Positions 6,791-49,333 of a stretch of DNA of 64,000 bases are shown here, piece by piece. The notes under the pieces are model-generated. The model was given only the letters and a program-made list of their open reading frames with translations. It was not told the DNA's origin and ran no database searches. The translations under genes were made by a program, and so were the position numbers. Position 1 is the stretch's first letter. Each line of letters opens with the position of its first letter. Source of the DNA: Hydrolagus colliei (taxonomy: Eukaryota); the NCBI GenBank assembly GCA_035084275.1, contig CM068769.1, positions 1,736,001 through 1,800,000 of the forward strand, read 5' to 3'.

Positions 6791-8835
6791 CTCCACATGA
6801 TACATGCCTACAGATCACGGAATTTATCCTCTGTGAGTCCGTGCGGTGTGATATGAATAGTCGAAGTTGTTGTTGTTAAGAACATAGGAGCAGCAAAACG
6901 TGTGTTTTACACTATTGCCAAATAGTTTAAAACACTCGGGATTTGGAATTATCTGTACTTTCAGATAATTTAATGAGTGCAATTCAAACTGCAACACACA
7001 ATGATTAAAAACATAATATATTTGCATTGTTTGCTGTTAAAATGTTATGCACAATTTATTGTGGTTTCGCATAATTTAAACACTTAAAATGTAATTGCAC
7101 TCTATCCATACTATTCATGCTGTAATTTCTGGACTCTGTAGCAGTAAAAGCTAATCAAGAGTCCATGATATCAGAGAATTGTTTCTACTTTTTTATGCTC
7201 CTACTCAAAAGCCAGTCTGCTTGTCATCATATTTTTTCATTATGGTATTTGTTCAATTGTTAAATTAATATTATTGTTGAAATTCTTCCTTTGTTGTTTA
7301 TTGTTGTTGTACCCTATGCCCCCTTTTGTTCGACAGGCTCCTCAACTCCATTCCACCTTTATTTAACATCGATGAATGAAATCCCACTGTTGACTTTAGC
7401 ATGGCTGGTCTGAGGTTCACACGCTGATCATTCTTCGCATTTTCTGCAGGGGGAAAATACTTTCAACCCTCCATTCCTCTACACAAAACTGGTATTCAAT
7501 ACAGCATGAACAATTGTGGCCAGAGCATGCGTTATTGACTCGCTTCTTCACCCAGTAGTCTAGGGTATCAATGATCTAGACGAGCGCATTGAATACAACG
7601 TACGTAACCTCGCGGATGATACTAAACTAGGTGGGAGAGTAAACTGATGCAAAAAGTTTGCAACGGGATATAGATAGGCTACGGGAGCGGGCAAGGAGTT
7701 CGCTGGTGGAATTTGATGTGTGGAAGTGTGAACTTATTCACCTAGGTAGTAAAAAGAGAAAAACAGATTATTTTTAAAATAGGAATAGATTAGATAGTGT
7801 TAGTGAGGCATTTGGGTGTCCTTGTACACCAGCCGCAAAAAGTTAGTTGGCAGTTACTGCATGCAAACAAATGGCGAACGGCATGTTAGCGTTGATTACA
7901 AAAACTGTAGAGCACAAGAGTAGCAAAGTCTTGCTGCAACAGAATAGGAGCTTGGTGAGACCGCACCTACGGAATTGTGTGCAGTTTTCGTCTCCTTATT
8001 TAAAAAAGGCATACTTGTCTTAGAGCTATTGCAGCGTAGATTCACTAGGTTACTTCCACGGATGAGTGGACTAACCTATGAGGATAGGTTGAATAAACTA
8101 GGGCTGTAGTCTCTAGAGTACAGAAGAATTAGAGAAGATATTATTGAACCAGATAGGATTCTTAAAGGGCTAGATAAAGTAGACAATGAGGGACTGTTTC
8201 CCCTGGTAGGAGAATGTAAAACCAGGGGTCATATTCTTAAAATGAAGGGTCAGCTTTCTTGGAATAACTCACAAAGCGTTTAGTTTATTCGTGTAAAGCA
8301 CAAACAGCCATTTAATATACTAACGGACGAAAGGAGAAATACCCTCACAGGTCAGATACCCGAGGTAGTACCTCTAAGGAACTAATAGAAACACAACAGT
8401 TTATATATTATTCTTTTGCACGCCATATGACAGTAGTATAAGTTCTAGGGAACGGCGATTAATCGGTTTTTCGATTAAACCCGATATGATTTTCAGATCG
8501 GTATGCCGATATGGTGATTCTAAAAAACTGTTATATCGAGAGATTCGATTTTAAAAATATACATCGATATATTTTTAATATCGTTCCTGGCAATATATCA
8601 ATATTGTTGGTATTAGCAGTGTAATGCGACCTTTTCCAGCTTACCTTGTGGCCGGCATTGCAACCTCCTGGATCTAGAGCATGGAATGCGCGTACATTCG
8701 GTGCGCGCGCACAATTAACGGGCGCGCACATCCGATCAGCGCGCACTCTTTACCGTGTATACTCGACGTGAGTCGTGGCGTCTTAACAAAGTCGCATCGC
8801 TGAAAATTGTAGTTTGAAAATTTACCTGTCTCATC

Positions 8836-9486
8836 ATGGGGAAAAGAAGCCCCGTATGGGACTACTGTGAAAACAATGCAGTCAGTAATGGTGTGTATAG
8901 ATGTACAGTTTGCAAGGTCTTGGTTAAGACATCTGATTCGAGCACGAGCAACCTCCGACATCACATTAAGCAGCACCACCCCGCCCAGCACGCTGCCCTC
9001 AGAGCGAAATCATTGTCGACAACAGCAGGAAGTCGAAACAGCGCTTCGGAGAAAGCGACAGGTAGTGGGGCCAGTACAGCTCAAACAATTCCTGCTTTAT
9101 TTAAGAGGAGAACATTGTACCAGAGAGGGTACAAAAAGTGGCAAAGTATCACGAACGCTGTCACTTTTTGCATAGAAAAGGAGAGCTTGCCAATGGCGAA
9201 GGATATTAATTCAGACTTCAGACTACCTAAAAATAAGTGGCATTTTGTGGCTGTAAGTGTTATTGTTGTGTGTGAGAGAGTTAGAAGCCAGATTATCAAT
9301 GCTTCTATGTGTGTGTCTAGTCAGACACACACAGCAGTGATAATCTGGCTTCTAACTCTAAAAGTCATACTGTCTGTCTCTCTCTTTTCTATTGTAATAG
9401 ATCTCATTTACACGTGGACATTACATGCTAGTTTCAAGCAACAAATGGAGGAGAATATATCTCTGGATTTTGTTTTTGGTGTGTGA
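8836..9486 (+). CDS. Truncated hAT transposase N-terminus with BED zinc finger (ZBED1-like)
   Basis: MGKRSPVWDYC...CTVCKVLVKTSDSSTSNLRHHIKQHH = BED finger, followed by ITNAVTFCIEKESLP typical of ZBED1-type transposases. No DDE core; homology is lost after ~135 aa, near a gtaagt donor. Confidence 0.85.
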   Translation: MGKRSPVWDYCENNAVSNGVYRCTVCKVLVKTSDSSTSNLRHHIKQHHPAQHAALRAKSLSTTAGSRNSASEKATGSGASTAQTIPALFKRRTLYQRGYKKWQSITNAVTFCIEKESLPMAKDINSDFRLPKNKWHFVAVSVIVVCERVRSQIINASMCVSSQTHTAVIIWLLTLKVILSVSLFSIVIDLIYTWTLHASFKQQMEENISLDFVFGV

Positions 9487-9499
9487 GTGTTCTATTTTA

Positions 9500-10260
9500 T
9501 GTTTAGAGCTGAAGGGAAAGGAGGAGAGGGGGATAGTTGGGAGAGAAGGAGAGAGGAAGAGAGGAGAGGGAGGGAGAGAATGAGAGGGGGGAATGAGGGA
9601 GAGAAGGAGCGTGGGGAAAAGGAGGGAGGGAGGGAGGGAGGGAGAGAAGGAGAGGGGGAAAGTTGGGAGAGAAGGAGAGAGGAAGAGAGAAGAGGGAGGG
9701 AGAGAAGGAGAGGGTGAAAGGAGGGAGAGAAGGAGCGAGTGGAAAGGAGGTAGAGAAGGAGAGTGTAAGAGAGGAGAGGGTGGGAGGGAGAGAATGAGGG
9801 GGGGAAAGGAGGGAGAGAAGGAGCGAGGGGAGGGAGGGAGAGAAGGAGAGAGGGGAGGGAGGGAGTGGGGGAAAGTTGGTAGAGAAGGAGAGAGCAAGAG
9901 AGGAGAGGGAGGGAGAGAAGGAGAGGGCGGGAGAGAAGGAGAGGGGGAAAAGAGGGAGAGAAGGAGCGAGTGGAAAGGAGGGAGAGAAGGCGAGAGGGGA
10001 GGGAGGGAGAGAAAGAGAAGGAGAGAGGGGAGGGAGAGAAGGAGAGGGGGAAAGGAGGGAGAGAAGGAGAGAGGGGAGGGAGGGAGAGAAGTAGAGAGTG
10101 GAGGGAGAGAAGGAGCGAGGGAGGGAGGGAGGGAGAGAAGGAGAGGGGGAAAGGAGGGAGAGGAGAGTGGGACAGTGGATGGGGAGGGTGAGAAGGAGAG
10201 GGGAAAGGAGGGAGAGAAGGAGAGAGGAGAGGAGAGAGAGAAGGATTGGGGGAGGTAGGG
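9500..10260. repeat. GA-rich (GGAGGGAGAGAA-type) low-complexity repeat inside the hAT element
   Basis: Purine-only tandem variants. This repeat accounts for the long Pro/Ser/Leu and Arg/Glu/Gly ORFs in the track. Confidence 0.95.
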
Positions 10261-12199
10261 AGCAAACAACATCGTATAATTCAACAGACCTTGACACCAA
10301 CATTACAAACTTTCTGGACATAGAGCACGCATTTCGAAATGTGCGTGCACCGCGACTGCGCGCGCATCGTCAGTGCGGCCGCACCGTCAATGCGCGCGCA
10401 CCGCGACTGAGCGCGCACCATAAATGCGCGCGCGCCATCAATGCACGCGCACTTCGAATGCACGCGCATGCGCAGTATAAATACTCGATAGATCGGTTTA
10501 AGCAGGTATGAGCAAACCGATATATCCATATCCGGAAAAATCCCATATCGCCGTTCCCTAATAAGTTCCTTTATCCAATTACAGCAATCCACCTAATCAA
10601 TAAAAGTGAATGCGAGAAGAGAGTTGAACTTTATTTACATTAGCCATGGGGTGCAAAAAGGGCAGAATCTGTTAAAACAGAACTAGACAATCACAAGTTG
10701 CTAACTGATAGATTGCAATTTTCAAAGAAAGAAGTAAATCGTATTTAATGATCAGGCATATACTGAATTAATTGATTACCAAATACAATAACAAGCAGGG
10801 AATGTCTAATTTAAGCAAGTACAAGCCTTTCTCCCTTCTTCGGTCTGAACTATGTCATACAACTGACGTTTGCTGATAACCCTGCTGACCTCTGGAATTT
10901 CTAACGGAGACTAAGAAACAGCTAACAATGTCCAGGGGAAATCTAAGAAACAGCTAATATGGTTTCCGATTTTTAACATGGTTTCCACACAGCCTTTTAC
11001 AACAGAGGTGAGGAAACATTTCTTCACTCAGAGGGTAGTGAATTTATGGAAGGCTGTAGATGCTCACTCCTTGAACATTTTCAAAGCTGAGACTGATATC
11101 TTTTTCAAAAATAGAAGGATTAGGGGATATGGTAATTACAGTTAGGTGAGAAGATCAGCCATTATCTTACCGAATGGCAGGGCAGGCTACAGAAGCCCAA
11201 TGGCCTACTCCTGCTCCCAATTCTTATGTTCTTATGATATATGCATATATATCAATCTGGACAAATGATATATGCAATCTGGGCAAGGGGAGCTTGAGCA
11301 ACATCAACCTTTTTAATGTTTCCTCTCTGTGTCATCTTATCCTATCTAATTTCTTGCATCTACCAATACTGTGGAATTGGCTGCATACTCTCTATACATG
11401 TAATTTTGGTGTTGCATATACTAACAAAGTGAGTATTCGCTCTTTCGCTCTCAATCAATTGATCATGCTACTCCAATGTTATCTTTGCTGCTACACCACG
11501 TCGTTGAAAACAACCCAGATTGCAATTCGCTCATATATATTGCTGAGAGATTGCTTTTATACTCATAACATGTTTGGTTACTATCTGCTTCGAAATAGAA
11601 AGTCACTAATAAATATGTAAAGGTTGACAGATAACAAGAGAGAGTGATACACCTATATAACGATACAAGAGACGAAAAGTGAAACAAAGTGAGAAAGAAA
11701 ATGACTATGCCAGCTCTTTCATTCAAATAGAATCCACGTGGTTCTTCAATGTGAAACTGTTAAGAATTTTTTGCTGCTATTGAATACAACATGTGAGGAT
11801 TAATTTTGTTAATATTCTGACTGCATTGTTAATGAACTACAAATCAACAAAGATGACAAGTCACCTGAACAAGATGATCTACATGCAAGCCTAATGTTAG
11901 GATTTGGGAATGGCTAATCCAGCACAGTACTTTTTTCGAAAAGTGTGATTGAGTTAATCGAGGAAGCTGCATGTCAATTATCTTAACACTGGTTGTGGAC
12001 AAAATATTAGAAATTATAATAAAAGGGGAATAATTTGTTATCTGCAGAAATAAACTGTGGTGAAGGCAGGCAGTCAAGAAGAGATAACCATTACAAAACG
12101 AAAAGGTGTAGTTGTCCTGTGTATAAGTTTCCAGAAAGAGTTTGCTAATACAACAGCAAGAACGTTTAAATTTTGAGTGCCTTTCACTTCGGGAGTACG

Positions 12200-12760
12200 T
12201 CATCGAATCATAGAATCTTATGATAAAAAAGGAGGCCGTTCGGCTCATCGCGTCTGTGCCGGCTCCTTAAAAAGAGCAAGTTAATGCCACTCCCAAGATC
12301 TCTGTCCATAACCACGCAAGCCATCCTCCTCATAAAAATGTGCATTAATCTTTTAAAAGTTGTTATCGAATCGGCCTCCACCACCTTTTCAGGAAATGCA
12401 TTCCAAATTGGAAGAAGTCGCTGACTGAAAAAAAATCCCCTCATCTCCCCTCTGCTTGTTTGTGAAACTATTTGAAATCTGTGATCGCGAGTTATGCATA
12501 CACCCAACAATGGAAACAAGTTTTCATTGTTTAGTGTGTCGAATCCCCTCATGATCTAAAAACATCTGTTGGGTCACCACGTAACCTTCTCTGCTCCAAT
12601 AAGAATATACCTAGCCTTTCTAGCCTTTCTCATAAATGAAGTCGCACTTTCTTGTTACCATCCTGATAAATCTCCTCTGTACCCTTTCCATTGCATTCAC
12701 ACGCTTCCTAAAGTGTGGCGATCAGAATTAAACGCATTACTGTAGCTCAGGCCTAATTAA
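12200..12760 (-). mobile_element. CR1 LINE 3' fragment
   Basis: ORF 12208-12552 (LFPLLG..TRDHRF...FFSQR...WNAFPEKVVEA) and an (atcatagaat) tail. Confidence 0.85.
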
Positions 12761-16225: not shown

Positions 16226-18299
16226 TGCATGTATGTAATTCTGCTGTTCATCATATAGATAAGCGATCTGGGTTTCGGAGATGTGCTGTCAGTATGCGTG
16301 CATGACATCAAATTAGTGTGGGGGTGGTGGATGGTAAACACTGAAGTAGATTTGATAAGAACGGTGGCAGATATTGAAAGTTTAACAATGTGGGAAGAGA
16401 AATTGAAAACAAACGTTTACCAATGTGAGCAGACAGATTGATAACAATAATAAATAAAATAATAATCCTAAAATGAATTTTATTGTGTGACAATGAAAAG
16501 TAAATCATTTTACTTCTGCGGGAAAGCTAAGGTATATTATATCCTTTAGTGGACAGTAAGACTTCCAGATGAACAGAGGGCAAACATATCTGGGATTTCA
16601 GATCCACAAAACTATCAAACACTAATCAATTACAAAAATACATTTTCAAAAATGACAAACGAAAGTAAATTGTTGATGTTGATTTCCATTTGGTCAGACG
16701 AATATATGATGTATACGGAATCCCATCATCAAATTAAAAGCCAGAGATTTCCACGCATCCCACCTACATATTACAATTCTTGTTGTATACATTGGAATGG
16801 ATTATAAAATTTATTCCTGATGTTTCGCATTGTTCTTCCCTAATCCCAGCTGTATTAGTCGCAGTTAGGCAAGAGCAAAGGTTTGGGGAACCCAGAATAT
16901 GTATTGGGATATACGTGTTGCAATCTAAAATTGTGAGCCAAATCGGTAATGAATGTAATTGTGAGGTGAGCAAAGAATAAGCAACGACTGAACCAAGAAA
17001 ATTGTGTCAGGTGAGGCATGTGAAGCGGTGACCGAAAGGGCTGGCAAAAAGCTGAGTTGCTCCCTTTTTATGCATAGGGCATTAACAAGTAACATTTCGT
17101 GCATATATCTCTGCAGAACATCACTTTCTCCCTCTTCCAAATCATTTGTACGGTTAGCATTCAGTTTTTAAACATTTTTAAAATCCGTTCTGCTACCTCT
17201 TCTATAACTCCAGCCGATTGGAATTTTATCAACATTTATCTCACATGGTACTTTAATCAATTCACTCTGGAAATACAGATATTTTATATCCACTGCATTT
17301 CTTTAACCGATATGTCGGTTACGTATCCCAAATTGAATAATATTTATAACGGATGTGTCTTCGTAGTTTCATGCTAACTGCTTAATTATACTTTACTTCT
17401 CCAGAAAAATATTTTGTTGTGGAATACTAAACATTGTCCACAACTGACTTGAAGATTATTGGCCTGGAGTTACTTCGAATAGTTGCATCGCACTTTTAAA
17501 AAAACATATATATTGGCCACTCCACAGTAATCTTAGTGACGTTAGTCACAGCCCTCATTGACACAGTGCCTTGTCGTCTTGGAAATTTTTCAAATGATTA
17601 GTAAGTGGATCATCATACCGATCCAGCTACCTTTGGAACGATCCGTTCATTTTTTAACTATTTTCTAAAATGTCTCACATTTAGTACACATGTCGTTTGC
17701 ATTGCAGCAATGTGCTCATATTTTCATTATCTTCTCTCTCTCGTTTTGTCTTCTCTATTTCCGCACAGGTATGTCTATCTCCAGTTATCTTTCTTCAACT
17801 ATTTCTCACTTTGTAACTTTCTGTTTGGATGCACAAAGGAGAAAACCTCGTGACCAATAATTCAGCCATGTCAAGGGGCAAAATACAGTCTAGGATTCTT
17901 CAGCTGCTGACAGTGAAGCCAAGTGAACAGTGAAGCCAAGATTGGAGCAGTGTGACAACAGGGAGCGAGAAGGAGAGGGACCCTGTGTCGCTATTGTGGA
18001 ATTAACTCACACAGTACTCAAACACAAGTAGCATATATGAGAACAATTTTAATAATACTGTACAGCTGAAAGGGGAAGCACCCACTCAGGCTAACGTCAT
18101 TTCCACTTAGAAGTTACACGTAATTTTTTAAAATCTTTATCTTATTATGACCCGTGACAATTCTGCGGCATTTTAAAACCAATCATAATAATACAAGTTT
18201 CCTTCATGACCATGTCTTCTTGTCTGACCCTGAAAACTTGGTGCAAAACAATACCTAACTCAGCCAGTTGGACATTGTCCACAACTAGATGTCAAGATA

Positions 18300-26343: not shown

Positions 26344-27834
26344 TCCGGTCTCTGAGTCTCGCGAGTGTCCATCTACTGGAAGGCAATGGGAACAACTGAG
26401 AAAGACAGCGGGGGTAACCCGCTGGTTGTCTTACCCGTGCCTGGAGCTCCAGGCATGTGTAAGACAACCAGCGTTCGGAAGCTCATCCACGAAAGGGTTA
26501 CCGGATCACACTTCAGGAAATTCGCTTTCGTTTTCCTCTTCAAATTCAAAGACCTCAACCTGATCGACGGGCCGCTCAGCCTGGTGGGGTTGGTGGAGGA
26601 CGCACACGCAGAGCTGGTCGGCTGCGCGTGCGCCATCCTCAAGAGGAAGGAAATCATCCTGTTTGCTTTAGGCGGCCTGGATGAGAGTAAGGCCGGAAAG
26701 GATTTGAACGCAGACAAGCTCTGCGATGATCCTGAAAAGTCAGCGCCAGGTTCCGTGCAGGTGAGCAGCCTGGTGGCCCAGTGTCTCCTCAAGGGCTGCT
26801 CCGTGCTGGTGACCAGGCCGACCGACCGCCTCTCTCTCCGTGGACACCAGTCGCATCGACCGCTGCACTGAGTTTCTGGGCTTTCTGCCGGAGCGACGCA
26901 AAAATGTAGTTCAACTGGTTCTTCAGTGACGTGAAGATCAGTGGCGAAGCTTTCCTATCTGGAGAGCAGAACGGAGTCCTGCACAACACGTGCTTCAACC
27001 TTTCCTGTTGCTCGATCCTTTGCACAGTCCTGAAGCCGCACTTTGTGGAAAAACAAAAAAAGCAGCACTCACCCAAAACCGTCACCCAACTTTTCCGAGC
27101 TACGTGCACGACATTCTGACCAAACATGGAAGGGAAGCCCAGTACAAGAGGGATTTGATGGGGGAAACTCGGCAAGTTGGTTTTGCACGACGTTTACAGC
27201 AAAGATTTAGTGTTTTATCCATATGAATTTGATAGTGTTCGCTTGTCACCTTTTCAGTTCCTCTCTGGCTTCCTGATCGAGACGCTGGAGAGTGAGAAAT
27301 CGTCAAAGCGGATTGTCCATACTTTCAACCACTTGACCGTTCAGGAGTTTCTGGCTGCTCTGCCTTGATACATCGCCAGAGGCCCTGGCGAACTGGAAGC
27401 CACACTCCGCAACGCCGAGGAGCGTTAAGATGGGCGTTTCGATATCTTCATCCGCTTCCTCGCCGGCCTCTCAAACCTCACGTACACCCACCAGATACAG
27501 ATTATCCTGGGGGAAATTTGAAACTGTGCCCCGTCCTGGACTGGCTGATACAGAAAACCAGGCGTTTACTGGTGGCCAACTGTAGGGAGGATCTACTCTC
27601 TTGCCTACACTGTCTCTTCGAAGCCCAAAACAAGCCCCTCGTCCAAGCTGCGTTCCGGTCGCTGACTACACTCAAACTCTCAAACCACCACCTGACTCCT
27701 GTGAATACACAGTTTTTGCGTATAATCAGGAATGCAGTGATGTGGACAAGCTAACTCTCATGGTTTGCAACATCCAAGCAGAAGGGATGAAGAGACTGGC
27801 ATTCGCGCTGCACAAGTGTAAGGAGCTTTCTTGA
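26344..27834 (+). pseudogene. NACHT-LRR (NLRC3-like) receptor, NACHT exon, pseudogene
   Basis: Walker A GAPGMCKTT (G to C), FAFVFLFKFKDLN, Walker B ILFALGGLDES, LLKGCSVLVTRPT, TCFNLSCCSILC, PKTVTQLF, FNHLTVQEFLAA, FIRFLAGLS, LHCLFEAQN. These motifs lie in several frames with multiple frameshifts and stops. Confidence 0.9.
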
Positions 27835-40263: not shown

Positions 40264-40613
40264 GGTTATTGTAGGAGGCTTCCTATAATGTGTATAACTG
40301 GGGTGCAGACTGGCTGCACAATGATACATAGCGGAGTCTGGCAGCTGCAAGCTGGCGATGGTTAAATGGCTGATTTTCATGGCAGTGTCAAGTGAAGCAC
40401 AAATATGATCTCCAGTGGTGTTTTCTCCCCCTCCTGAGGGGTTTCTGTGGAGAAGGTATATCGGTGCCTCACCTGGGAACTGACGGTACCAGGAGACACT
40501 GAAATTCTGTCCGTAGATTCCTGAATATTAGCATTGGAAATCTACTCTCTCACCTACAATAGCCGTTTGTTCAGGCGGTGACTGAGAAACTGTGTAATTC
40601 GCTGAAAGTTCAA
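40264..40613 (-). pseudogene. TCR delta-type V exon (40303-40613) with degenerate 23-RSS, pseudogene; no leader found
   Basis: tatccag| ELSANYTVSQSPPEQTAIVGES [2-nt deletion] DFQC*YSGIYGQNFSVSWYRQFPGEAPIYLL...SHLTIASLQLPDSAMYHCAASL; RSS CCCAGTT-23-ACAATAACC. Confidence 0.85.
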
Positions 40614-42344
40614 CTGGATAACTCGATCCTATGGGGGTAAAAATTAGATAATGGTTGGAACTACAAAGTCATAACAATAATAATCCTTGCATTTTGTGTA
40701 GCACTTTTGATATTTTCTTTAAGTCTCAAAGCGCTTTGCAGATTAAATTGTAAAGTGACTTCCCTGTATATATGTGGGCGAAATGCGGCAGCCAATTGCT
40801 CACGGCAGTTTCCCACAAACAGTCGTGGAATGAAATTACCAGTTTTATCATTGTGCTTGATTTCGAATAATGATTGCGAGGCGTGTGAAGCAAGAAAATG
40901 TGCCCACGCTTTTGAGCTGACCTACTTGGATTCGAAAACAGTTATTACGCTGTAAATCGAGTGCTCTAACCACTAAAATAATGGACTCCACTGCGATTTT
41001 ACAGCACAGAAGAAGGCAGTTCTTCCGTATAGACAATTCAATATCCTGTCCGTCTAATCCCACACCCATGCTCCTATCATATTTCCAGCATACTTATTTT
41101 GGATTACTCTACTGATACAAACACCTTTTGAAATTTATTACTCAATCTGCTTGTATCGTAGTTTCAGTCGCGCTGTCCATATTGTGAAATAATTGTGATT
41201 ACCTCCCCTCTGGCTCTTTGTTTGACGATTGGTTAATAATCCACTGGCCAGTGCAAGAGATTCTCTGTACCTGCCCTATCAGTCACTCCCTTAAACTTCA
41301 TTGTTCCATGAAGAACACTGCCTAGCTCTCGTCTCTTCATTCATTCATAGTGTCTCATCTCTTTTATCATTCTGTTGAAACTCCTTTACAACCTGTCCAA
41401 GTCTCTGAGGTCATTACCATATATCCATTAAAACTGTATTGTTTCCAGGAAAGTTGATTTTCTAATCAACTTTAAGGAATAATTTGATCTGACTGGTGGG
41501 AAAACAGGGGAATGGATGAGCTGCTGAATTTAATCCGGATTTTAGTGCAGACACAACCCGTGTGCCTATTTCGGTGACACAATTTATATGACCTCTCGTT
41601 AAATACTCAAATTTATTAAGCTTCTGTTCTCCTTGCAGTAAATGGCAACCCAATTTTTTGTTGATTTCCGGTGACAATCATCACCAAAATATAAATATAT
41701 ACCCATTAGGTAACTCAATCCTAGACTTTGTATGTGATATGTCTGTGCTGCATTATGTCTATATCATTTCGCCCGCAAACAATATAACTCTGAACAATAA
41801 TAAGACTCAATACTTGTCACTAATAATAATAATAATCTTTGCGTTTGATATAGCAGATTTCAAATATGCTGGAATCTCAAAACGCTTCACAGAATACAGT
41901 GAAATGTTATTTGACTGTATTTTTGTATATTCTTTAAAGTTTACTATGTAAGCCATAAAACGTTGAGATGCCTCAAAGATATAGAGAGCAGTATATCAAA
42001 TGTAAGTATTATTATTATCTCTGATAAATATACGATTTAGTTACATTTCGCTTGCTTAGCCGTAAATTTGTTTGCGAAAGGAGATTGATCACATTGAAGC
42101 TTTGCTTGTCTGTGATCATGGGAATGTAAAGCAGAGAACCAGGTGTCATTGAGTACAGTTAACTAAAATAGTTTACAATTGAGAGAGATGGAATTCCCCT
42201 CTGTTGTTACTTTAACTTTGCTGCTGGAGGAGCTGAACTCTCTGGCTTGTTTCCAATATCAAGTCTCTCTCAGTTTGGGAGCCTATCAATGCAGTATCAC
42301 TTTGAGCTGAATATATGTGCATTCTTTATTACTTAATAAAAAAT

Positions 42345-43340: not shown

Positions 43341-43723
43341 TTTTTTCGCACTTGCTTTTCGTAACAGTTACTTTTGTTCCAAACGCATATTTATGTTTAA
43401 CTGAGCTTCGCACTGTGTGACGCTATTCTTCATATCGAACGTTACAATATTAGGTAGCGCTGTCTTGAAGTTCCAAAGCACTAATTTGCAGACAAGAAGA
43501 TTTCGATGTCTCGTCTGTAGCGCTGTAACTACAGACGAGACATCGAAATCTTCCCTTGTCATTCGCAAAAATTAGTGCTTTGGAAACTCTCAAGACAGCG
43601 TACCTCAATCATTGTAACGTTCGATATGAAGAATAGCGTCACACAGTGCGAAGCTCAGTAAACATAACTATGCGTTTGGAAGCACTAAGAAACAGTCTAC
43701 GAAAATATGCAAGCTGCGAAAAA
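43341..43723. repeat. Fold-back inverted repeat (~180-195-bp arms, 8-nt loop at 43521-43528)
   Basis: Left arm ...aagatttcgatgtctcgtctgtag, loop cgctgtaa, right arm ctacagacgagacatcgaaatctt... Complementarity extends to tttttcgca / tgcgaaaaa. The right arm carries many small insertions. Confidence 0.95.
43356..43520 (-). pseudogene. 3' half of a germline-joined NAR-like V-CDR3-J exon
   Basis: A single frame reads TDETSKSSCLQISALELQDSAT*YCNVRYEE*RHTVRSSVKHKYAFGTKVTVTK, then a donor-like gcaagt. It is co-linear with the exon at 44604-44956. Confidence 0.75.
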
Positions 43724-44603: not shown

Positions 44604-44956
44604 TTTTTGTTACGGTTAATCTGGTTCCAGTCCCATCTTTGTTTTTTTTACCGAGTTTCGCACTTTGTAATGATATTCGTCCTATCGAGCTCCGCAATAA
44701 TAGGTAGCGCTGTCTTCAACTTCCTGGTTATTGATTTCTAAAGATAACGAAGTCGATACTTTGCCGGTTTTTATAACAAACTGATCGTCAGCAGGGATGG
44801 AAACCAGTCGTGTCTCTTTACCAACTTGTCTAACAAATTCCATGCTCTTGACAATCACATACAATTGTGCTTCAAATACACAGTTGATGGTCATCGACTC
44901 GCATTCTTGTCCCTGCATAGATATTGGTGTCTGCTTTACAGAGACACTGTCAGCTT
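44604..44956 (-). pseudogene. Germline-joined NAR-TCR/IgNAR-like VDJ exon (V fused to J), with a stop and a 2-nt poly-A slip
   Basis: tttcag| EADSVSVKQTPISMQGQECESMTINCVFEAQLYVIVKSMEFVRQ...SLSLEINNQEVEDSATYYCGAR*DEYHYKVRNSV [A8] KDGTGTRLTVTK |gtaagt. There is no J-type 23-RSS or intervening DNA between V and J. Confidence 0.85.
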
Positions 44957-46684: not shown

Positions 46685-46868
46685 TTCTTTCCTTCTTTCC
46701 TTCATTCCTTCATTCCTTCTTTCCTTCTTTCCTTCTTTCCTTCTTTCCTTCTTTCCTTCTTTCCTTCTTTCCGTCTTTCCGTCTTTCCGTCTTTCCGTCT
46801 TTCCGTCTTTCCGTCTTTCCGTCTTTCCGTCTTTCCGTCTTTCCGTCTCCGTCTTTCCGTCTTTCCGT
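46685..46868. repeat. (TTCCTTCT)n/(TTCCGTCT)n octamer microsatellite abutting a gap
   Basis: Directly visible; followed by N run 46869-47220. Confidence 0.95.
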
Positions 46869-47220
46869 NNNNNNNNNNNNNNNNNNNNNNNNNNNNNNNN
46901 NNNNNNNNNNNNNNNNNNNNNNNNNNNNNNNNNNNNNNNNNNNNNNNNNNNNNNNNNNNNNNNNNNNNNNNNNNNNNNNNNNNNNNNNNNNNNNNNNNNN
47001 NNNNNNNNNNNNNNNNNNNNNNNNNNNNNNNNNNNNNNNNNNNNNNNNNNNNNNNNNNNNNNNNNNNNNNNNNNNNNNNNNNNNNNNNNNNNNNNNNNNN
47101 NNNNNNNNNNNNNNNNNNNNNNNNNNNNNNNNNNNNNNNNNNNNNNNNNNNNNNNNNNNNNNNNNNNNNNNNNNNNNNNNNNNNNNNNNNNNNNNNNNNN
47201 NNNNNNNNNNNNNNNNNNNN
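46869..47220. other. Assembly gap (N run)
   Basis: Run of N. Confidence 1.
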
Positions 47221-47773
47221 GCTTTCAATTCCATCTTCAACTTTCATTTCTTTTATTTTGTCAGAATACCGTGTTCGCGTTCTTCAATAATTATTCAATT
47301 TATTGCTGTCGAGTCAAACAAAAATTCGGTGGAAACACTCAACGTGTACGATTCGAAAAGGCGGGATTCTAAAGGAATAGTTTACGTTGCATTTCATACT
47401 GGAGTCAGTTCAGTGCAAGGAGATATGACATCTCGGGAGAATCGATGCGGAGAGGGTTGTCATACGCCTTGGGAACTAACTTATCCTGCATTAGTCATTT
47501 AGTTTAATTTACATTCAACATATCTTGTAGGCACGTTTCTTTGAAAACTCTCCAGTAAAATTCAATGACATCAGAAAATAATGAAATGCATGTAATTTAC
47601 TAAATCAACAGCCTTTTCAAAATCACAAACATATGATTTATTTTCCAAAAGCCGTCAAGTGGATTGTTGAAATGACAAACTAGCAAATAACCATGAGCAC
47701 ATTTTTTTTTGAAAAATGCATTTGAGAAATTCACGTAAATACATTTTTATGTTAGGATGACAGACATGCTTAC

Positions 47774-47868
47774 TTTCTGTTACTGCGGCTTTGGTATCTG
47801 ATCCATCTTCAGTATAGTACCATCCATAACACAGTCACACAGCTCTCGTTATACAAGGGGCAAAAACT
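47774..47868 (-). other. J segment (47774-47829) with 23-RSS, NAR-TCR-like
   Basis: Encodes YGWYYTEDGSDTKAAVTE followed by phase-1 donor gtaagc. RSS CACAGTC (47830-36) - 23 nt - GCAAAAACT (47860-68). Confidence 0.85.
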
Positions 47869-48178
47869 GCTCTATCTGATCATGACTGAATACAGGCAAT
47901 AAGTATAACTAAATGATAAGAAGTTAGTTATCTATTTCTATATCTCTACCACGGTCTCAACATACATTCACTTTATCCAAACAGGTTTAGCTTAACTATT
48001 ATTTCCACCAAACACTGACAAGTTGCCTAGCCCAGAACACAACCTACTGTTAATAATTCCAGAAATATCCGCTTGAAATTAGTAATTTGGAAAGTAATCA
48101 CCTGACAAATGTAGCACAATACAACAGTACACAGAAGTTAGTAGTCACGTATAATGTATTTCCATGTAAAAAGCGCAC

Positions 48179-48252
48179 GCTATTTGTGCTAATTGATTCC
48201 AATGTGGCCTCCCCAAGCGTCCACCACAGTATTTGCTGTCAACACAAATACA
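48179..48252 (-). other. D segment (48207-48224, GTGGACGCTTGGGGAGGC) flanked by two 12-RSS
   Basis: CACAGTA-12-ACAAATACA on the V-proximal side and CACATTG-12-ACAAATAGC on the J-proximal side. All three frames are open. Confidence 0.85.
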
Positions 48253-48579
48253 TTCTTTTCCAAAACAAGTGTAATATTCTCTGGTCGTTTACAATTATTA
48301 TTCAATGATATAAAGGTCTGCAATTATTTTGAATATTTTCCGAATAGGACTTGTCATGCCACGTATCTCACTTCCTTAAACAGCAATATAATCCAATTGC
48401 TTTCAACAACTAAAGTCAATTTATACTCACCAAATCTTCTAATCTGTTCATCAATAATGTTTGTTTCTTGAAGAGAATGTTATGAAACACTATTGCACAA
48501 CACACAGCAATGGAAAATGTGCATTGAATTCAATGACAAAGTCATATTGTCTGTCTATTTTCTTTGAATTGGCGAAGGG

Positions 48580-49333
48580 CCTTTTTGCATTTCTGGAAGC
48601 CTGGATGCAGCATTGTCTTGTTCGAAAAATTTCGAGCTCTACATCTGTATGTAGCGCTGTCGGCAACTTGCAAATCATTAATTTCCAGCCTTGATGTCAT
48701 TGCTCCCACTTTGATAACATCAAACGGTCTTTCATTAGGGATAGGCTTCCAATCTCCTCCGTTTGGAAACGGCCTTCGAAATGCCAAGCTAATGGTTCCG
48801 TAGCTCCCCGAATTCCCTTCTGCAAAGACGCAGTTGATGGTCAAAGAATCGCATTCTTCTTTATTGTCAGAGGTTGGTATCTGTGTTACGGTTTCACTGA
48901 AAACATCTGAAACATGTAAAATAGGACATCAGGTTAATACAGGCAAAACCCTGACCTACACCAGCATCAGCAATTCCCGATGCTTGGCCTCAGTTGAATT
49001 GATTTCAATGAATACAATAATTATATAATTATGCTATCATGTTTAATGAATAGAATACACGCAGAACAGATTACTCGGTAGGAATCGGCTGTGGCTTTTC
49101 GCCCGCAAATAAAATAAAAATAAAAAAGAAGTACGGTCAGTTCTTCATACAATATACACTTTGAAGTGCTTTAACACGTTTCATCGATCTCAAAAGCCTC
49201 TGTATCAACGCAAGGAATAATGTAAATTATGCTAAGTTACAGTGTAACGATGCTATTCACTCGGGCAGTGTAATTGGAACAAAAACTCACCTTGTAAGCA
49301 GTGAAAGGCGATGGCGACAGAGATGAGATGCAT
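48580..49333 (-). CDS. NAR-TCR/IgNAR-like V segment (leader 49291-49333, V exon 48618-48906), open reading frame
   Basis: Leader MHLISVAIAFHCLQ|gtgagt. V: DVFSETVTQIPTSDNKEECDSLTINCVFAEG...LAFRRP...SRLEINDLQVADSATYRCRAR. Short FR2-to-second-Cys interval (46 aa, no CDR2) and a TYRC motif as in VNAR. RSS GACAATG-22-GCAAAAAGG. Confidence 0.88.

What the first reader, a model, noticed from the sequence alone, without database searches (positions are those of the whole stretch)
47774..49333. Complete unrearranged NAR-TCR-like cluster with IgH-type RSS logic and an unusual V
Seen: leader, open V exon, one D with 12/12 RSSs and a J with a 23-RSS and phase-1 donor, all within 1.6 kb. V23-12D12-23J is the IgH-type arrangement, embedded among TCR V genes. 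The V lacks CDR2 (46 aa from FR2 to the second Cys versus 59 in the V at 36.3 kb), has a non-canonical FR1 Cys, and lacks the canonical FR2 Trp (Phe at or next to that position; also in the 44.7-kb V: FVRQ). The V heptamer begins with G (GACAATG), which should block RAG cleavage. The J motif is GSDT rather than GxGT. Established: NAR-TCR is a doubly rearranging TCRdelta chain of cartilaginous fish.
Basis: partly seen in the sequence, partly recalled or inferred. Interest (0 to 1): 0.7.

Follow-up and report, generated by a model that had tools for sequence, protein, structure and literature searches.

The report
Broken NAR-TCR gene cluster, chimaera-type
This is an ordinary germline NAR-TCR V-D-J cluster (the extra antibody-like domain that cartilaginous fish add to a T-cell receptor delta chain); the features flagged as odd are the family's normal hallmarks, and this copy looks disabled.

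Summary
On the minus strand lie a leader (49333-49291), a V exon (48906-48618), one D with 12/12 signals (48252-48179) and a J with a 23 signal and a phase-1 donor (47868-47774).

The V is a NAR-type domain. All of the top PDB sequence hits are shark VNARs, and its closest relatives are Callorhinchus milii NAR-TCR chains.

The "unusual" features are published hallmarks of NAR-TCR V: no CDR2, a Cys in the a-b loop and no FR2 Trp. They appear in every NAR-TCR V I compared.

The V23-12D12-23J layout is also the family norm. I found it, with conserved spacers, in horn shark, catshark and sawfish genomes.

The J motif GSDT is close to the GSPT of C. milii.

The one real anomaly is the V heptamer GACAATG, where the three sharks keep CAC. 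The leaderless supporting delta-V 7.2 kb downstream (40601-40303) has an in-frame stop and a CCCAGTT heptamer. Every conventional V in the window is also broken.

Most likely this is a decaying NAR-TCR unit in a holocephalan TCR alpha/delta V region. It is a new member of a known kind, of low interest.

A side observation may deserve follow-up: leaderless, germline-joined NAR V(D)J exons sit between the NAR J and the supporting V, here and in horn shark.

The parts
49291..49333 (-). Leader exon, MHLISVAIAFHCLQ plus 1 nt (phase 1), donor gtgagt at 49290
   Evidence: 7 of 14 residues match the C. milii NAR-TCR leader MSLLGVSISFLFLQ.
48907..49290 (-). Leader intron (384 nt), ending in the acceptor ..tttacatgtttcag
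48618..48906 (-). NAR-TCR V exon with an open frame: DVFSETVTQIPTSDNKEECDSLTINCVFAEG..LAFRR..LEINDLQVADSATYRCRARNFSN. It has the a-b loop Cys, lacks the FR2 Trp and lacks CDR2.
   Evidence: The top 29 PDB phmmer hits are all VNAR, best 1e-9. It is 48-53% identical to C. milii NAR-TCR V. In the tree it lies in the NAR clade (99/96) and outside the IgNAR clade. The AF2 model has pLDDT 72.7 and its best folds are VNAR.
48579..48617 (-). V recombination signal: heptamer GACAATG (48617-48611), 22-nt spacer CTGCATCCAGGCTTCCAGAAAT, nonamer GCAAAAAGG. The first heptamer base is G, not C.
   Evidence: It is collinear with the shark NAR-TCR V signals CACAGTG/CACAGCG-22-ACAAAxxxx, with a shared GGCTT(C/T)C spacer core.
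48225..48252 (-). 5' signal of the D: TGTATTTGT-12-TACTGTG (CAC intact in signal orientation)
48207..48224 (-). D coding segment GTGGACGCTTGGGGAGGC, open in all three frames
48179..48206 (-). 3' signal of the D: CACATTG-12-ACAAATAGC
47830..47868 (-). J signal: AGTTTTTGC-23-GACTGTG (CACAGTC in signal orientation)
47774..47829 (-). J coding segment, YGWYYTEDGSDTKAAVTE plus 1 nt (phase 1), donor gtaagc at 47773
   Evidence: It resembles the C. milii NAR-TCR J YTADGSPTKVTVTK (P0016).
44604..44956 (-). Second NAR-type V fused in the germline to (D)J. It has no leader, a phase-1 acceptor, and J ..KDGTGTRLTVTK plus 1 nt with donor gtaagt. It is broken by a TAG at 44684-44682 and a 1-nt frame shift in the A-run at about 44649-44642.
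   Evidence: Its V part is sister to C. milii A0A4W3GPE3 (P0030) at 97/88 support, and P0030 reads through the same V..J stretch as one open frame.
43396..43662 (-). Fragment copy (112 nt, 71% identical) of the V-3'/J part of the 44.7-kb element, embedded in nested inverted repeats (52-nt arms at 98%, 25-nt arms at 100%)
40303..40601 (-). Leaderless supporting TCR-delta V, a pseudogene: ..TNYTVSQSPPEQTAIVGERVDFQC*YSGIYGQNFSVSWYRQ..DSAMYHCAAS. It has an in-frame TAA directly after Cys23 and Tyr at the CDR1 Cys position.
   Evidence: It is 55-73% identical to 14 C. milii supporting-V proteins. Acceptors lie at 40629 and 40602, both phase 1.
40264..40302 (-). Decayed signal of the supporting V: CCCAGTT-23-ACAATAACC. 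At the same place, C. milii copies translate as H-S-D .. T-I-T, which fits CACAGTG..ACAATAACC.

Best explanation
The region is the first, antibody-like half of a NAR-TCR gene unit in the TCR alpha/delta V region of a holocephalan. The closest sequences on record are from Callorhinchus milii.

**How an intact unit would work (inferred from the family)**
- RAG joins D to J using the 12 and 23 signals.
- RAG then joins V to DJ using the 22/23 and 12 signals. The 12/23 rule forces the D to be included.
- The leader-V-D-J exon is then spliced from its phase-1 J donor to a leaderless 'supporting' delta-V.
- The supporting delta-V rearranges on its own to the delta D/J/C segments.
- The result is a three-domain delta chain whose top NAR domain binds antigen unpaired.

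**What this copy can and cannot do (inferred)**
- D-to-J joining is still possible.
- V-to-DJ joining should fail or be very rare, because the cleavage-critical first heptamer base is G.
- The only supporting V downstream carries a stop codon and a CCC heptamer.
- The unit is therefore most likely a decaying, non-expressed copy in a stretch where every other V is also broken.

The identity and the anatomy are shown. The loss of function is inferred. My confidence in the NAR-TCR identity is about 0.93, and in loss of function about 0.6. The confidence given for this explanation is for the whole statement.
For: **Identity**
- PDB phmmer hits are all VNAR, and the fold search gives VNAR.
- A full HMMER scan of 1.8 billion proteins gives NAR-TCR chains as the only full-length relatives, with C. 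milii closest.
- The tree places it in the NAR clade at 99/96, outside the IgNAR clade (84/87), next to C. milii NAR-TCR V.
- The a-b loop Cys, the missing Trp and the own leader match the published hallmarks (PMC1845163).
- The C. milii genome has NAR-TCR but no IgNAR (PMC3964593).
- A full IgNAR heavy chain finds no IgNAR C exons in the window.
- A homologue of the supporting V lies 7.2 kb downstream of the J. The same distance is 7.7 kb in horn shark, 4.6 kb in catshark and 1.9 kb in sawfish.
- The layout, spacer lengths and parts of the spacers are the same in three elasmobranch loci.

**Decay**
- The V heptamer is GACAATG, against CACAGTG, CACAGTG and CACAGCG in the sharks.
- CAC is required for RAG cleavage (bioRxiv 10.1101/2021.12.03.471157; abstract of PMC12711392).
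- No alternative CAC lies near the V end.
- The supporting V has a TAA stop and a CCCAGTT heptamer.
- The joined NAR V at 44.7 kb has a stop and a frame shift.
- The conventional Vs at 36.3, 53.1, 55.6, 61.3 and 63.7 kb all carry stops or frame shifts.
Against: - The leader, both splice sites, the 289-nt V frame, both D signals and the J signal are all intact. Inactivation, if real, is therefore recent or partial.
- The single G could be an assembly error or one allele. The assembly has gaps, and at least one lesion nearby (the A-run shift at 44.65 kb) is of a kind that sequencing errors produce.
- A 352-nt gap (46869-47220) lies between the J and the next exon. I did not and may not fill it, so an intact supporting V there cannot be excluded.
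- No transcript or repertoire data were available.
- I could not read the DNA of C. milii orthologues, so lineage-specific tolerance of such a heptamer is untested.
Confidence: 0.6

Rival explanations
1. The cluster is a working NAR-TCR V-D-J. The G at 48617 is an assembly error, a rare allele, or is tolerated at low efficiency. The J splices to an intact supporting V that is hidden in the gap or lies elsewhere.
For: The leader, V frame, splice sites, D and J signals are all intact. The invariant structural residues shared by six NAR-TCR V domains are kept. A gap lies 550 nt downstream of the J. Tyr at the CDR1 Cys position also occurs in a C. milii supporting V (P0134), so that change is not in itself a lesion.
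Against: The only supporting V seen is dead by a substitution-type stop and a CCC heptamer. Every neighbouring V is broken. CAC is reported as required for cleavage. The gap is flanked by a (GGAAAGAC)n microsatellite, which is a sufficient reason for a gap without any exon in it.
Confidence: 0.27
2. The V is dead but the D-J pair is still used. Upstream V segments with 23-type signals join to this D, so the cluster survives as a D-J-splice module.
For: Both D signals and the J signal keep CAC and good nonamers. Upstream Vs at 53.1 and 55.6 kb carry consensus CACAGTG-23 signals compatible with the D's 12 signal.
Against: Those upstream Vs are themselves pseudogenes. The J would still have to splice to a supporting V that is broken here. 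There is no precedent that I could check.
Confidence: 0.08
3. It is an IgNAR or IgH-type immunoglobulin cluster whose J splices to Ig constant exons.
For: The RSS logic is of the IgH type and the V fold is that of VNAR.
Against: The V has the a-b Cys and lacks the Trp, unlike the IgNAR V domains compared. It falls outside the IgNAR clade. A complete IgNAR heavy chain matches nothing but V exons across the whole window, which includes the 47.7 kb downstream of the J. A supporting delta-V follows instead. C. milii, the holocephalan studied, lacks IgNAR and IgW (PMC3964593).
Confidence: 0.02

Closest known systems
NAR-TCR (NAR-TcR) of cartilaginous fish: Criscitiello, Saltis & Flajnik 2006 (nurse shark); Venkatesh et al. 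2007 and 2014 (elephant shark, Callorhinchus milii)
   Same: - Own leader.
- VNAR-type V without CDR2.
- Cys in the a-b loop.
- No Trp in the WYRK motif.
- Own D and J.
- J with a phase-1 donor.
- A leaderless supporting delta-V downstream.
- Location among TCR alpha/delta V segments.
- V22/23-12D12-23J signals, as in the horn shark, catshark and sawfish loci read here.
   Different: - The V heptamer starts with G.
- The supporting V has a stop codon, a CCC heptamer and Tyr instead of the CDR1 Cys.
- The J has GSDT. C. milii has GSPT, GTGT or GSGS, and elasmobranchs have GSGT or GAGT.
- The V is only 48-53% identical to the closest C. milii V.
IgNAR V (VNAR) gene clusters of elasmobranchs
   Same: The fold and framework motifs (SLTINC, INDL.V.DS.TYRC), and the missing C'/C'' strands.
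   Different: The IgNAR V domains compared keep the Trp (WYRK or WFRQ) and have no a-b loop Cys. IgNAR V genes are followed by IgNAR constant exons, and none are present here. From memory, IgNAR clusters use three D segments, against one here.
TCR-mu of marsupials and monotremes
   Same: A three-domain TCR chain with an extra N-terminal V made by its own rearrangement. In marsupials one V is germline-joined, which parallels the joined NAR V(D)J exons noticed at 44.7 kb and in horn shark.
   Different: TCR-mu arose independently from VH-like genes (PMC3457774). Its germline-joined V is the supporting domain, not an extra NAR-type one.

Membership tests
NAR-TCR | N-terminal V of the VNAR type (no CDR2, no C'-C'' strands) | tested here: met
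   All of the top PDB sequence hits are VNAR. There are 46 residues from FR2 to Cys, against 59 in a conventional V. Foldseek's best matches are VNAR, with TM 0.6-0.68 on a model of pLDDT 72.7.
NAR-TCR | Cysteine in the a-b loop of the NAR V (putative interdomain bridge) | tested here: met
   KEEC-DSLTINC. This column is invariant in the six-sequence alignment and present in all 16 NAR-TCR V compared. It is absent from the IgNAR V compared. The feature is named in PMC1845163.
NAR-TCR | Loss of the canonical Trp of the WYRK motif | tested here: met
   The window has LAFRR. Relatives have FFRQ, FYRK or FFKQ. IgNAR has WFRQ or WYRK (PMC1845163).
NAR-TCR | Own leader peptide on the NAR V | tested here: met
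   The 43-nt leader exon has a phase-1 donor and is homologous to the C. milii NAR-TCR leader.
NAR-TCR | Own D and J with signals that allow a separate V-D-J rearrangement | tested here: inconclusive
   The D (12/12) and the J (23) are intact and collinear with three shark loci. The V signal is in place, but its heptamer reads GACAATG, so V-to-DJ joining is doubtful.
NAR-TCR | J splices to a leaderless supporting TCR-delta V downstream | tested here: inconclusive
   A phase-1 donor sits at 47773. A leaderless supporting-V homologue with a phase-1 acceptor lies at 40601. That V has an in-frame stop, and no transcript data exist.
NAR-TCR | Supporting V carries a Cys in CDR1 | tested here: not met
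   The window has SGIYGQ, against SGICGQ in P0016 and SGFCQY in elasmobranchs. At least two C. milii copies also lack it: P0134 has Tyr and P0002 has Trp. This concerns the partner V, not the cluster in the finding.
NAR-TCR | Lies in the TCR alpha/delta locus | tested here: inconclusive
   The cluster is flanked by V segments whose best single-stretch PDB hits include V-delta-1 and many TCR alpha chains. No delta constant exon lies in the window, which is as expected for a V region.
NAR-TCR | Expressed as a three-domain delta chain | not testable with these tools
   No transcript or repertoire data for the source species were available.
IgNAR cluster | V followed by IgNAR constant exons, with the FR2 Trp kept and no a-b loop Cys | tested here: not met
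   tblastn with the IgNAR heavy chain P0056 finds only V exons. The residue pattern is of the NAR-TCR type. The V lies outside the IgNAR clade.

The most novel reading that the evidence does not exclude
Leaderless, germline-joined NAR V(D)J exons with a phase-1 acceptor and a phase-1 J donor sit between the rearranging NAR V-D-J and the supporting delta-V. This holds in this holocephalan (44956-44604, broken) and in horn shark (L001 10849-11193, broken; L001 11974-12318, intact). C. milii has an intact homologue (A0A4W3GPE3).

If such cassette exons are spliced in, cartilaginous fish would make delta chains with an invariant second NAR domain, or with an invariant domain replacing the rearranged one. 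That would parallel the germline-joined V of marsupial TCR-mu. I found no description of this in the papers I could search.
Probability: 0.1. Interest if true: 0.6.

Novelty: new member of a known kind. Interest (0 to 1): 0.27.

Why it matters
The finding adds a holocephalan example of the germline NAR-TCR layout. It also shows that the layout is conserved between chimaeras and sharks, rays and sawfish: spacer lengths of 22/23, 12/12 and 23, and even parts of the spacer sequence. This supports the view that the single-domain V with its own IgH-like signals was already part of the delta locus in the common ancestor.

As a gene it probably does nothing in this copy. Its main practical value is as a natural C1-to-G heptamer variant on an otherwise intact V, which gives a clean test of RAG stringency in a cartilaginous fish.

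Tried and rejected
- **Word-indexed protein search:** the V alone found nothing. The full HMMER scan was needed.
- **C. milii genomic DNA:** I tried to fetch it for P0016 and P0002, and neither is on record. No holocephalan orthologue of the heptamer could therefore be read.
- **Key papers:** Criscitiello 2006, Deiss 2019 and Ott 2021 are not held. The supplement of Venkatesh 2014 is not held. The published RSS layout of nurse-shark NAR-TCR is therefore quoted only from memory, and I replaced it with direct reading of three genomes.
- **Wasted search:** one literature search (TAILV/NAR) was useless.
- **Heptamer-12-nonamer after the 44.7-kb V:** I first read CAAAGTG-12-AAAAAAACA as a real signal, that is, a V with a 12-type signal or a hybrid joint. 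I rejected this. The stretch is collinear with an open frame in C. milii P0030, and its length fits V-extension plus D plus J-5'.
- **Leader for the 44.7-kb V:** none found. One 6/14 match at 47351 is at chance level.
- **The 44.7-kb V as the supporting V:** rejected, because it is of the NAR type.
- **Source species:** not identified beyond 'holocephalan'. The supporting V is 55-73% identical to C. milii copies, which are typically 77% identical to each other.

Full report
**Observation**

- **Leader:** a 43-nt leader exon (49333-49291, MHLISVAIAFHCLQ plus 1 nt, donor gtgagt), followed by a 384-nt intron.
- **V exon:** an open V exon (48906-48618).
- **V signal:** GACAATG, then a 22-nt spacer and GCAAAAAGG. 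It can also be read as a 23-nt spacer plus CAAAAAGGC.
- **D:** 18 nt of coding sequence (48224-48207), flanked by TGTATTTGT-12-TACTGTG and CACATTG-12-ACAAATAGC.
- **J:** AGTTTTTGC-23-GACTGTG, then 56 nt of coding sequence (47829-47774) giving YGWYYTEDGSDTKAAVTE plus 1 nt, with donor gtaagc.

The D-type double signal occurs once in the window against 0.00 expected from shuffles. 23-type signals occur 6 times against 0.4 expected.

**What the V is**

- phmmer against all PDB chains gives shark VNAR domains as the top 29 hits, best E = 1e-9.
- Pfam sees only a weak V-set or I-set C-terminal half.
- A word-indexed search found nothing.
- A full HMMER scan of 1.8 billion representatives found two kinds of hit. 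Multi-Ig proteins matched only on the F-strand motif. A set of proteins matched over the full length.
- The cluster look-ups identify the full-length set as NAR-TCR chains. Most come from elasmobranchs: horn shark, catshark, whale shark, epaulette shark, bamboo sharks, basking shark, smooth-hound and sawfish. The closest come from the elephant shark Callorhinchus milii (48-53% identity). The set also holds an IgNAR from Triakis.
- A profile search added about 60 more NAR-TCR two-domain gene models. C. milii is the only holocephalan on record.

**The 'unusual' features are the family's marks**

Venkatesh et al. 2007 (PMC1845163) state that nurse-shark and elephant-shark NAR-TCR V have three marks: a typical leader, a cysteine in the a-b loop, and no canonical tryptophan in the WYRK motif. 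They also state that the associated delta-V lacks a leader and has a CDR1 cysteine.

Every NAR-TCR V I extracted carries E-C at the a-b loop and F, Y or another non-Trp residue in FR2. The IgNAR V domains have T-G-E and W. In a six-sequence alignment of V exons translated directly from genomes, the a-b Cys and the FR2 Phe are invariant. The short FR2-to-Cys distance is the VNAR fold. An AlphaFold model from that shallow alignment (pLDDT 72.7, pTM 0.62, seven strands) matches VNAR crystal structures best, with TM 0.60-0.68. This model is only moderate support.

In a maximum-likelihood tree of 26 V domains:
- NAR-type V domains form a clade at 99/96, against conventional and supporting V domains.
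- The window V lies inside that clade. It is outside the IgNAR clade (84/87) and outside the elasmobranch NAR-TCR clade (95/96).
- It sits in an unresolved group with C. milii NAR-TCR V, and its nearest rows are P0016 and P0002.

A complete IgNAR heavy chain finds no constant exons anywhere in the window. The C. milii genome has NAR-TCR but no IgNAR or IgW (PMC3964593). The Ig alternative is therefore rejected.

**The RSS logic is the family norm**

I fetched genomic loci for three NAR-TCR gene models and read them.

| Species | V signal | D signals | J signal |
|---|---|---|---|
| Horn shark | CACAGTG-22-ACAAAATCT | 12/12 | 23 |
| Catshark | CACAGTG-22-ACAAATATC | 12/12 | 23 |
| Sawfish | CACAGCG-22-ACAAAAACC | 12/12 | 23 |
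| Window | GACAATG-22-GCAAAAAGG | 12/12 | 23 |

- The V spacers share a GGCTT(C/T)C core.
- The 5' spacers of the D share GTTGAC..AAA between the window and horn shark.
- The 3' D nonamers are ACAAATAGC in the window and ACAAATACC in horn shark.
- All four V genes carry 23-31 nt of coding sequence after the Cys codon. The long CRARNFSN tail is therefore normal too.

V23-12D12-23J is thus ancestral to the family. It differs from the host delta locus. From textbook knowledge, not tested here, the delta locus uses V23, 12-D-23 and 12-J.

**The J**

GSDT deviates from GxGT, and so do the J segments of C. milii:
- YTADGSPTKVTVTK in P0016, which shares 9 of 14 positions with the window J.
- NGSGSKVTVTK in P0044.

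Elasmobranchs have DGSGT or GAGT. The motif is therefore close to the lineage's own pattern. It is weak evidence either way.

**The real anomaly and its context**

The V heptamer starts with G where all three shark homologues keep CAC. No other CAC lies near the V end. CAC is described as required for RAG cleavage (bioRxiv 10.1101/2021.12.03.471157) and as strictly conserved (abstract of PMC12711392).

Downstream of the J, the first supporting-type V is at 40601-40303. It has these properties:
- It is 55-73% identical to 14 C. milii supporting V domains.
- It has no leader and starts at a phase-1 acceptor.
- It has a TAA directly after Cys23, where relatives have Gln.
- It has Tyr at the CDR1 Cys position. 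This is also seen in C. milii P0134, so it is not a lesion in itself.
- Its heptamer is CCCAGTT. The C. milii copies translate there as H-S-D, which fits CACAGTG.

The conventional V segments at 36.3, 53.1, 55.6, 61.3 and 63.7 kb all carry stops or frame shifts. The best PDB matches of the 36.3-kb V include V-delta-1 and TCR alpha chains.

The cluster thus sits in a graveyard of V segments and is itself hit at the one base that RAG cannot do without. Its intact frame, splice sites and D/J signals suggest that the damage is recent, or that the G is an error or one allele. Hence I give only about 0.6 for loss of function, against about 0.93 for the identity.

**Side observation**

Between the J and the supporting V lies a second NAR-type V (44956-44604).
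- It has no detectable leader in the 1.9 kb up to the gap.
- It starts at a phase-1 acceptor.
- It runs without any intervening signals into a J (KDGTGTRLTVTK plus 1 nt, donor gtaagt).
- It is broken by a TAG and by a 1-nt shift in an A-run.
- Its V part is sister to C. milii A0A4W3GPE3 at 97/88 support. That protein reads through the same V-to-J stretch as one open frame.
- A 112-nt fragment copy sits at 43.4 kb inside nested inverted repeats.

Horn shark shows the same plan. After an unrearranged leader-V-D-J come two leaderless, germline-joined NAR VDJ exons, and then the supporting V. The first exon (L001 10849-11193) has a TGA stop. The second (L001 11974-12318) is intact. The catshark and sawfish units read here have no such exons. 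Gene models are not evidence of splicing, so this stays a lead.

**Source organism**

The window is holocephalan, judged by the nearest relatives of all three V types. The supporting V is more distant from C. milii copies (55-73%) than those copies are from each other (median 77%). It is therefore either another chimaera or a decayed C. milii paralogue. I could not decide between these.

**Verdict**

The 'unusual' V and the IgH-type signals are the known family pattern. The G-first heptamer is real. Together with a dead partner V, it points to a decaying copy. This is a new member of a known kind.

Noticed in passing
window 44604-44956 (-): A second NAR-type V with no leader, fused in the germline to (D)J, with a phase-1 acceptor and a phase-1 J donor. 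It is broken by a TAG (44684-44682) and a 1-nt shift in an A-run. It is homologous to an open C. milii frame (A0A4W3GPE3).
   Followed up: partly
L001 (Heterodontus francisci CM071069.1) 10849-11193 and 11974-12318: Two leaderless germline-joined NAR VDJ exons lie between an unrearranged NAR V-D-J (8758-10081) and the supporting V (17821-18135). The first has a TGA stop and the second is intact. The layout matches the one in the window.
   Followed up: partly
window 43396-43662: A fragment copy of the V-3'/J part of the 44.7-kb element lies inside nested inverted repeats (52-nt arms at 98%, 25-nt arms at 100% with an 8-nt loop). This is either a fold-back rearrangement or an assembly artefact.
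   Followed up: partly
window 36.3, 53.1, 55.6, 61.3, 63.7 kb (-): All five conventional TCR alpha/delta-type V segments carry stops or frame shifts, although several keep consensus CACAGTG-23 signals. The NAR V at 48.6 kb is the only open V in the window.
   Followed up: partly
window 48589-48610; L001 9251-9272; L002 and L003 equivalents: The 22-nt spacer of the NAR-TCR V signal keeps a GGCTT(C/T)C core, and the 5' spacer of the D keeps GTTGAC..AAA, between a holocephalan and elasmobranchs. This is unusually deep conservation for RSS spacers.
   Followed up: partly
window 46700-46868, next to the gap 46869-47220: A (GGAAAGAC)n / (GGAAAGAA)n microsatellite abuts the gap, which probably explains the gap.
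   Followed up: no
window 26356-27751 (+): G+C-rich open frames with a P-loop-like GAPGMCKTT motif, which may be a fragment of a NACHT/NLR-type gene. LINE reverse-transcriptase fragments lie at 13.6 and 32.6-33.1 kb.
   Followed up: no
protein P0140 (C. milii A0A4W3..): A C. milii gene model reads from a supporting V, through its signal-derived residues (SDTYHRKP), straight into a J-like HGTGTAVTVTKSK. This is either a model artefact or another odd germline fusion.
   Followed up: no
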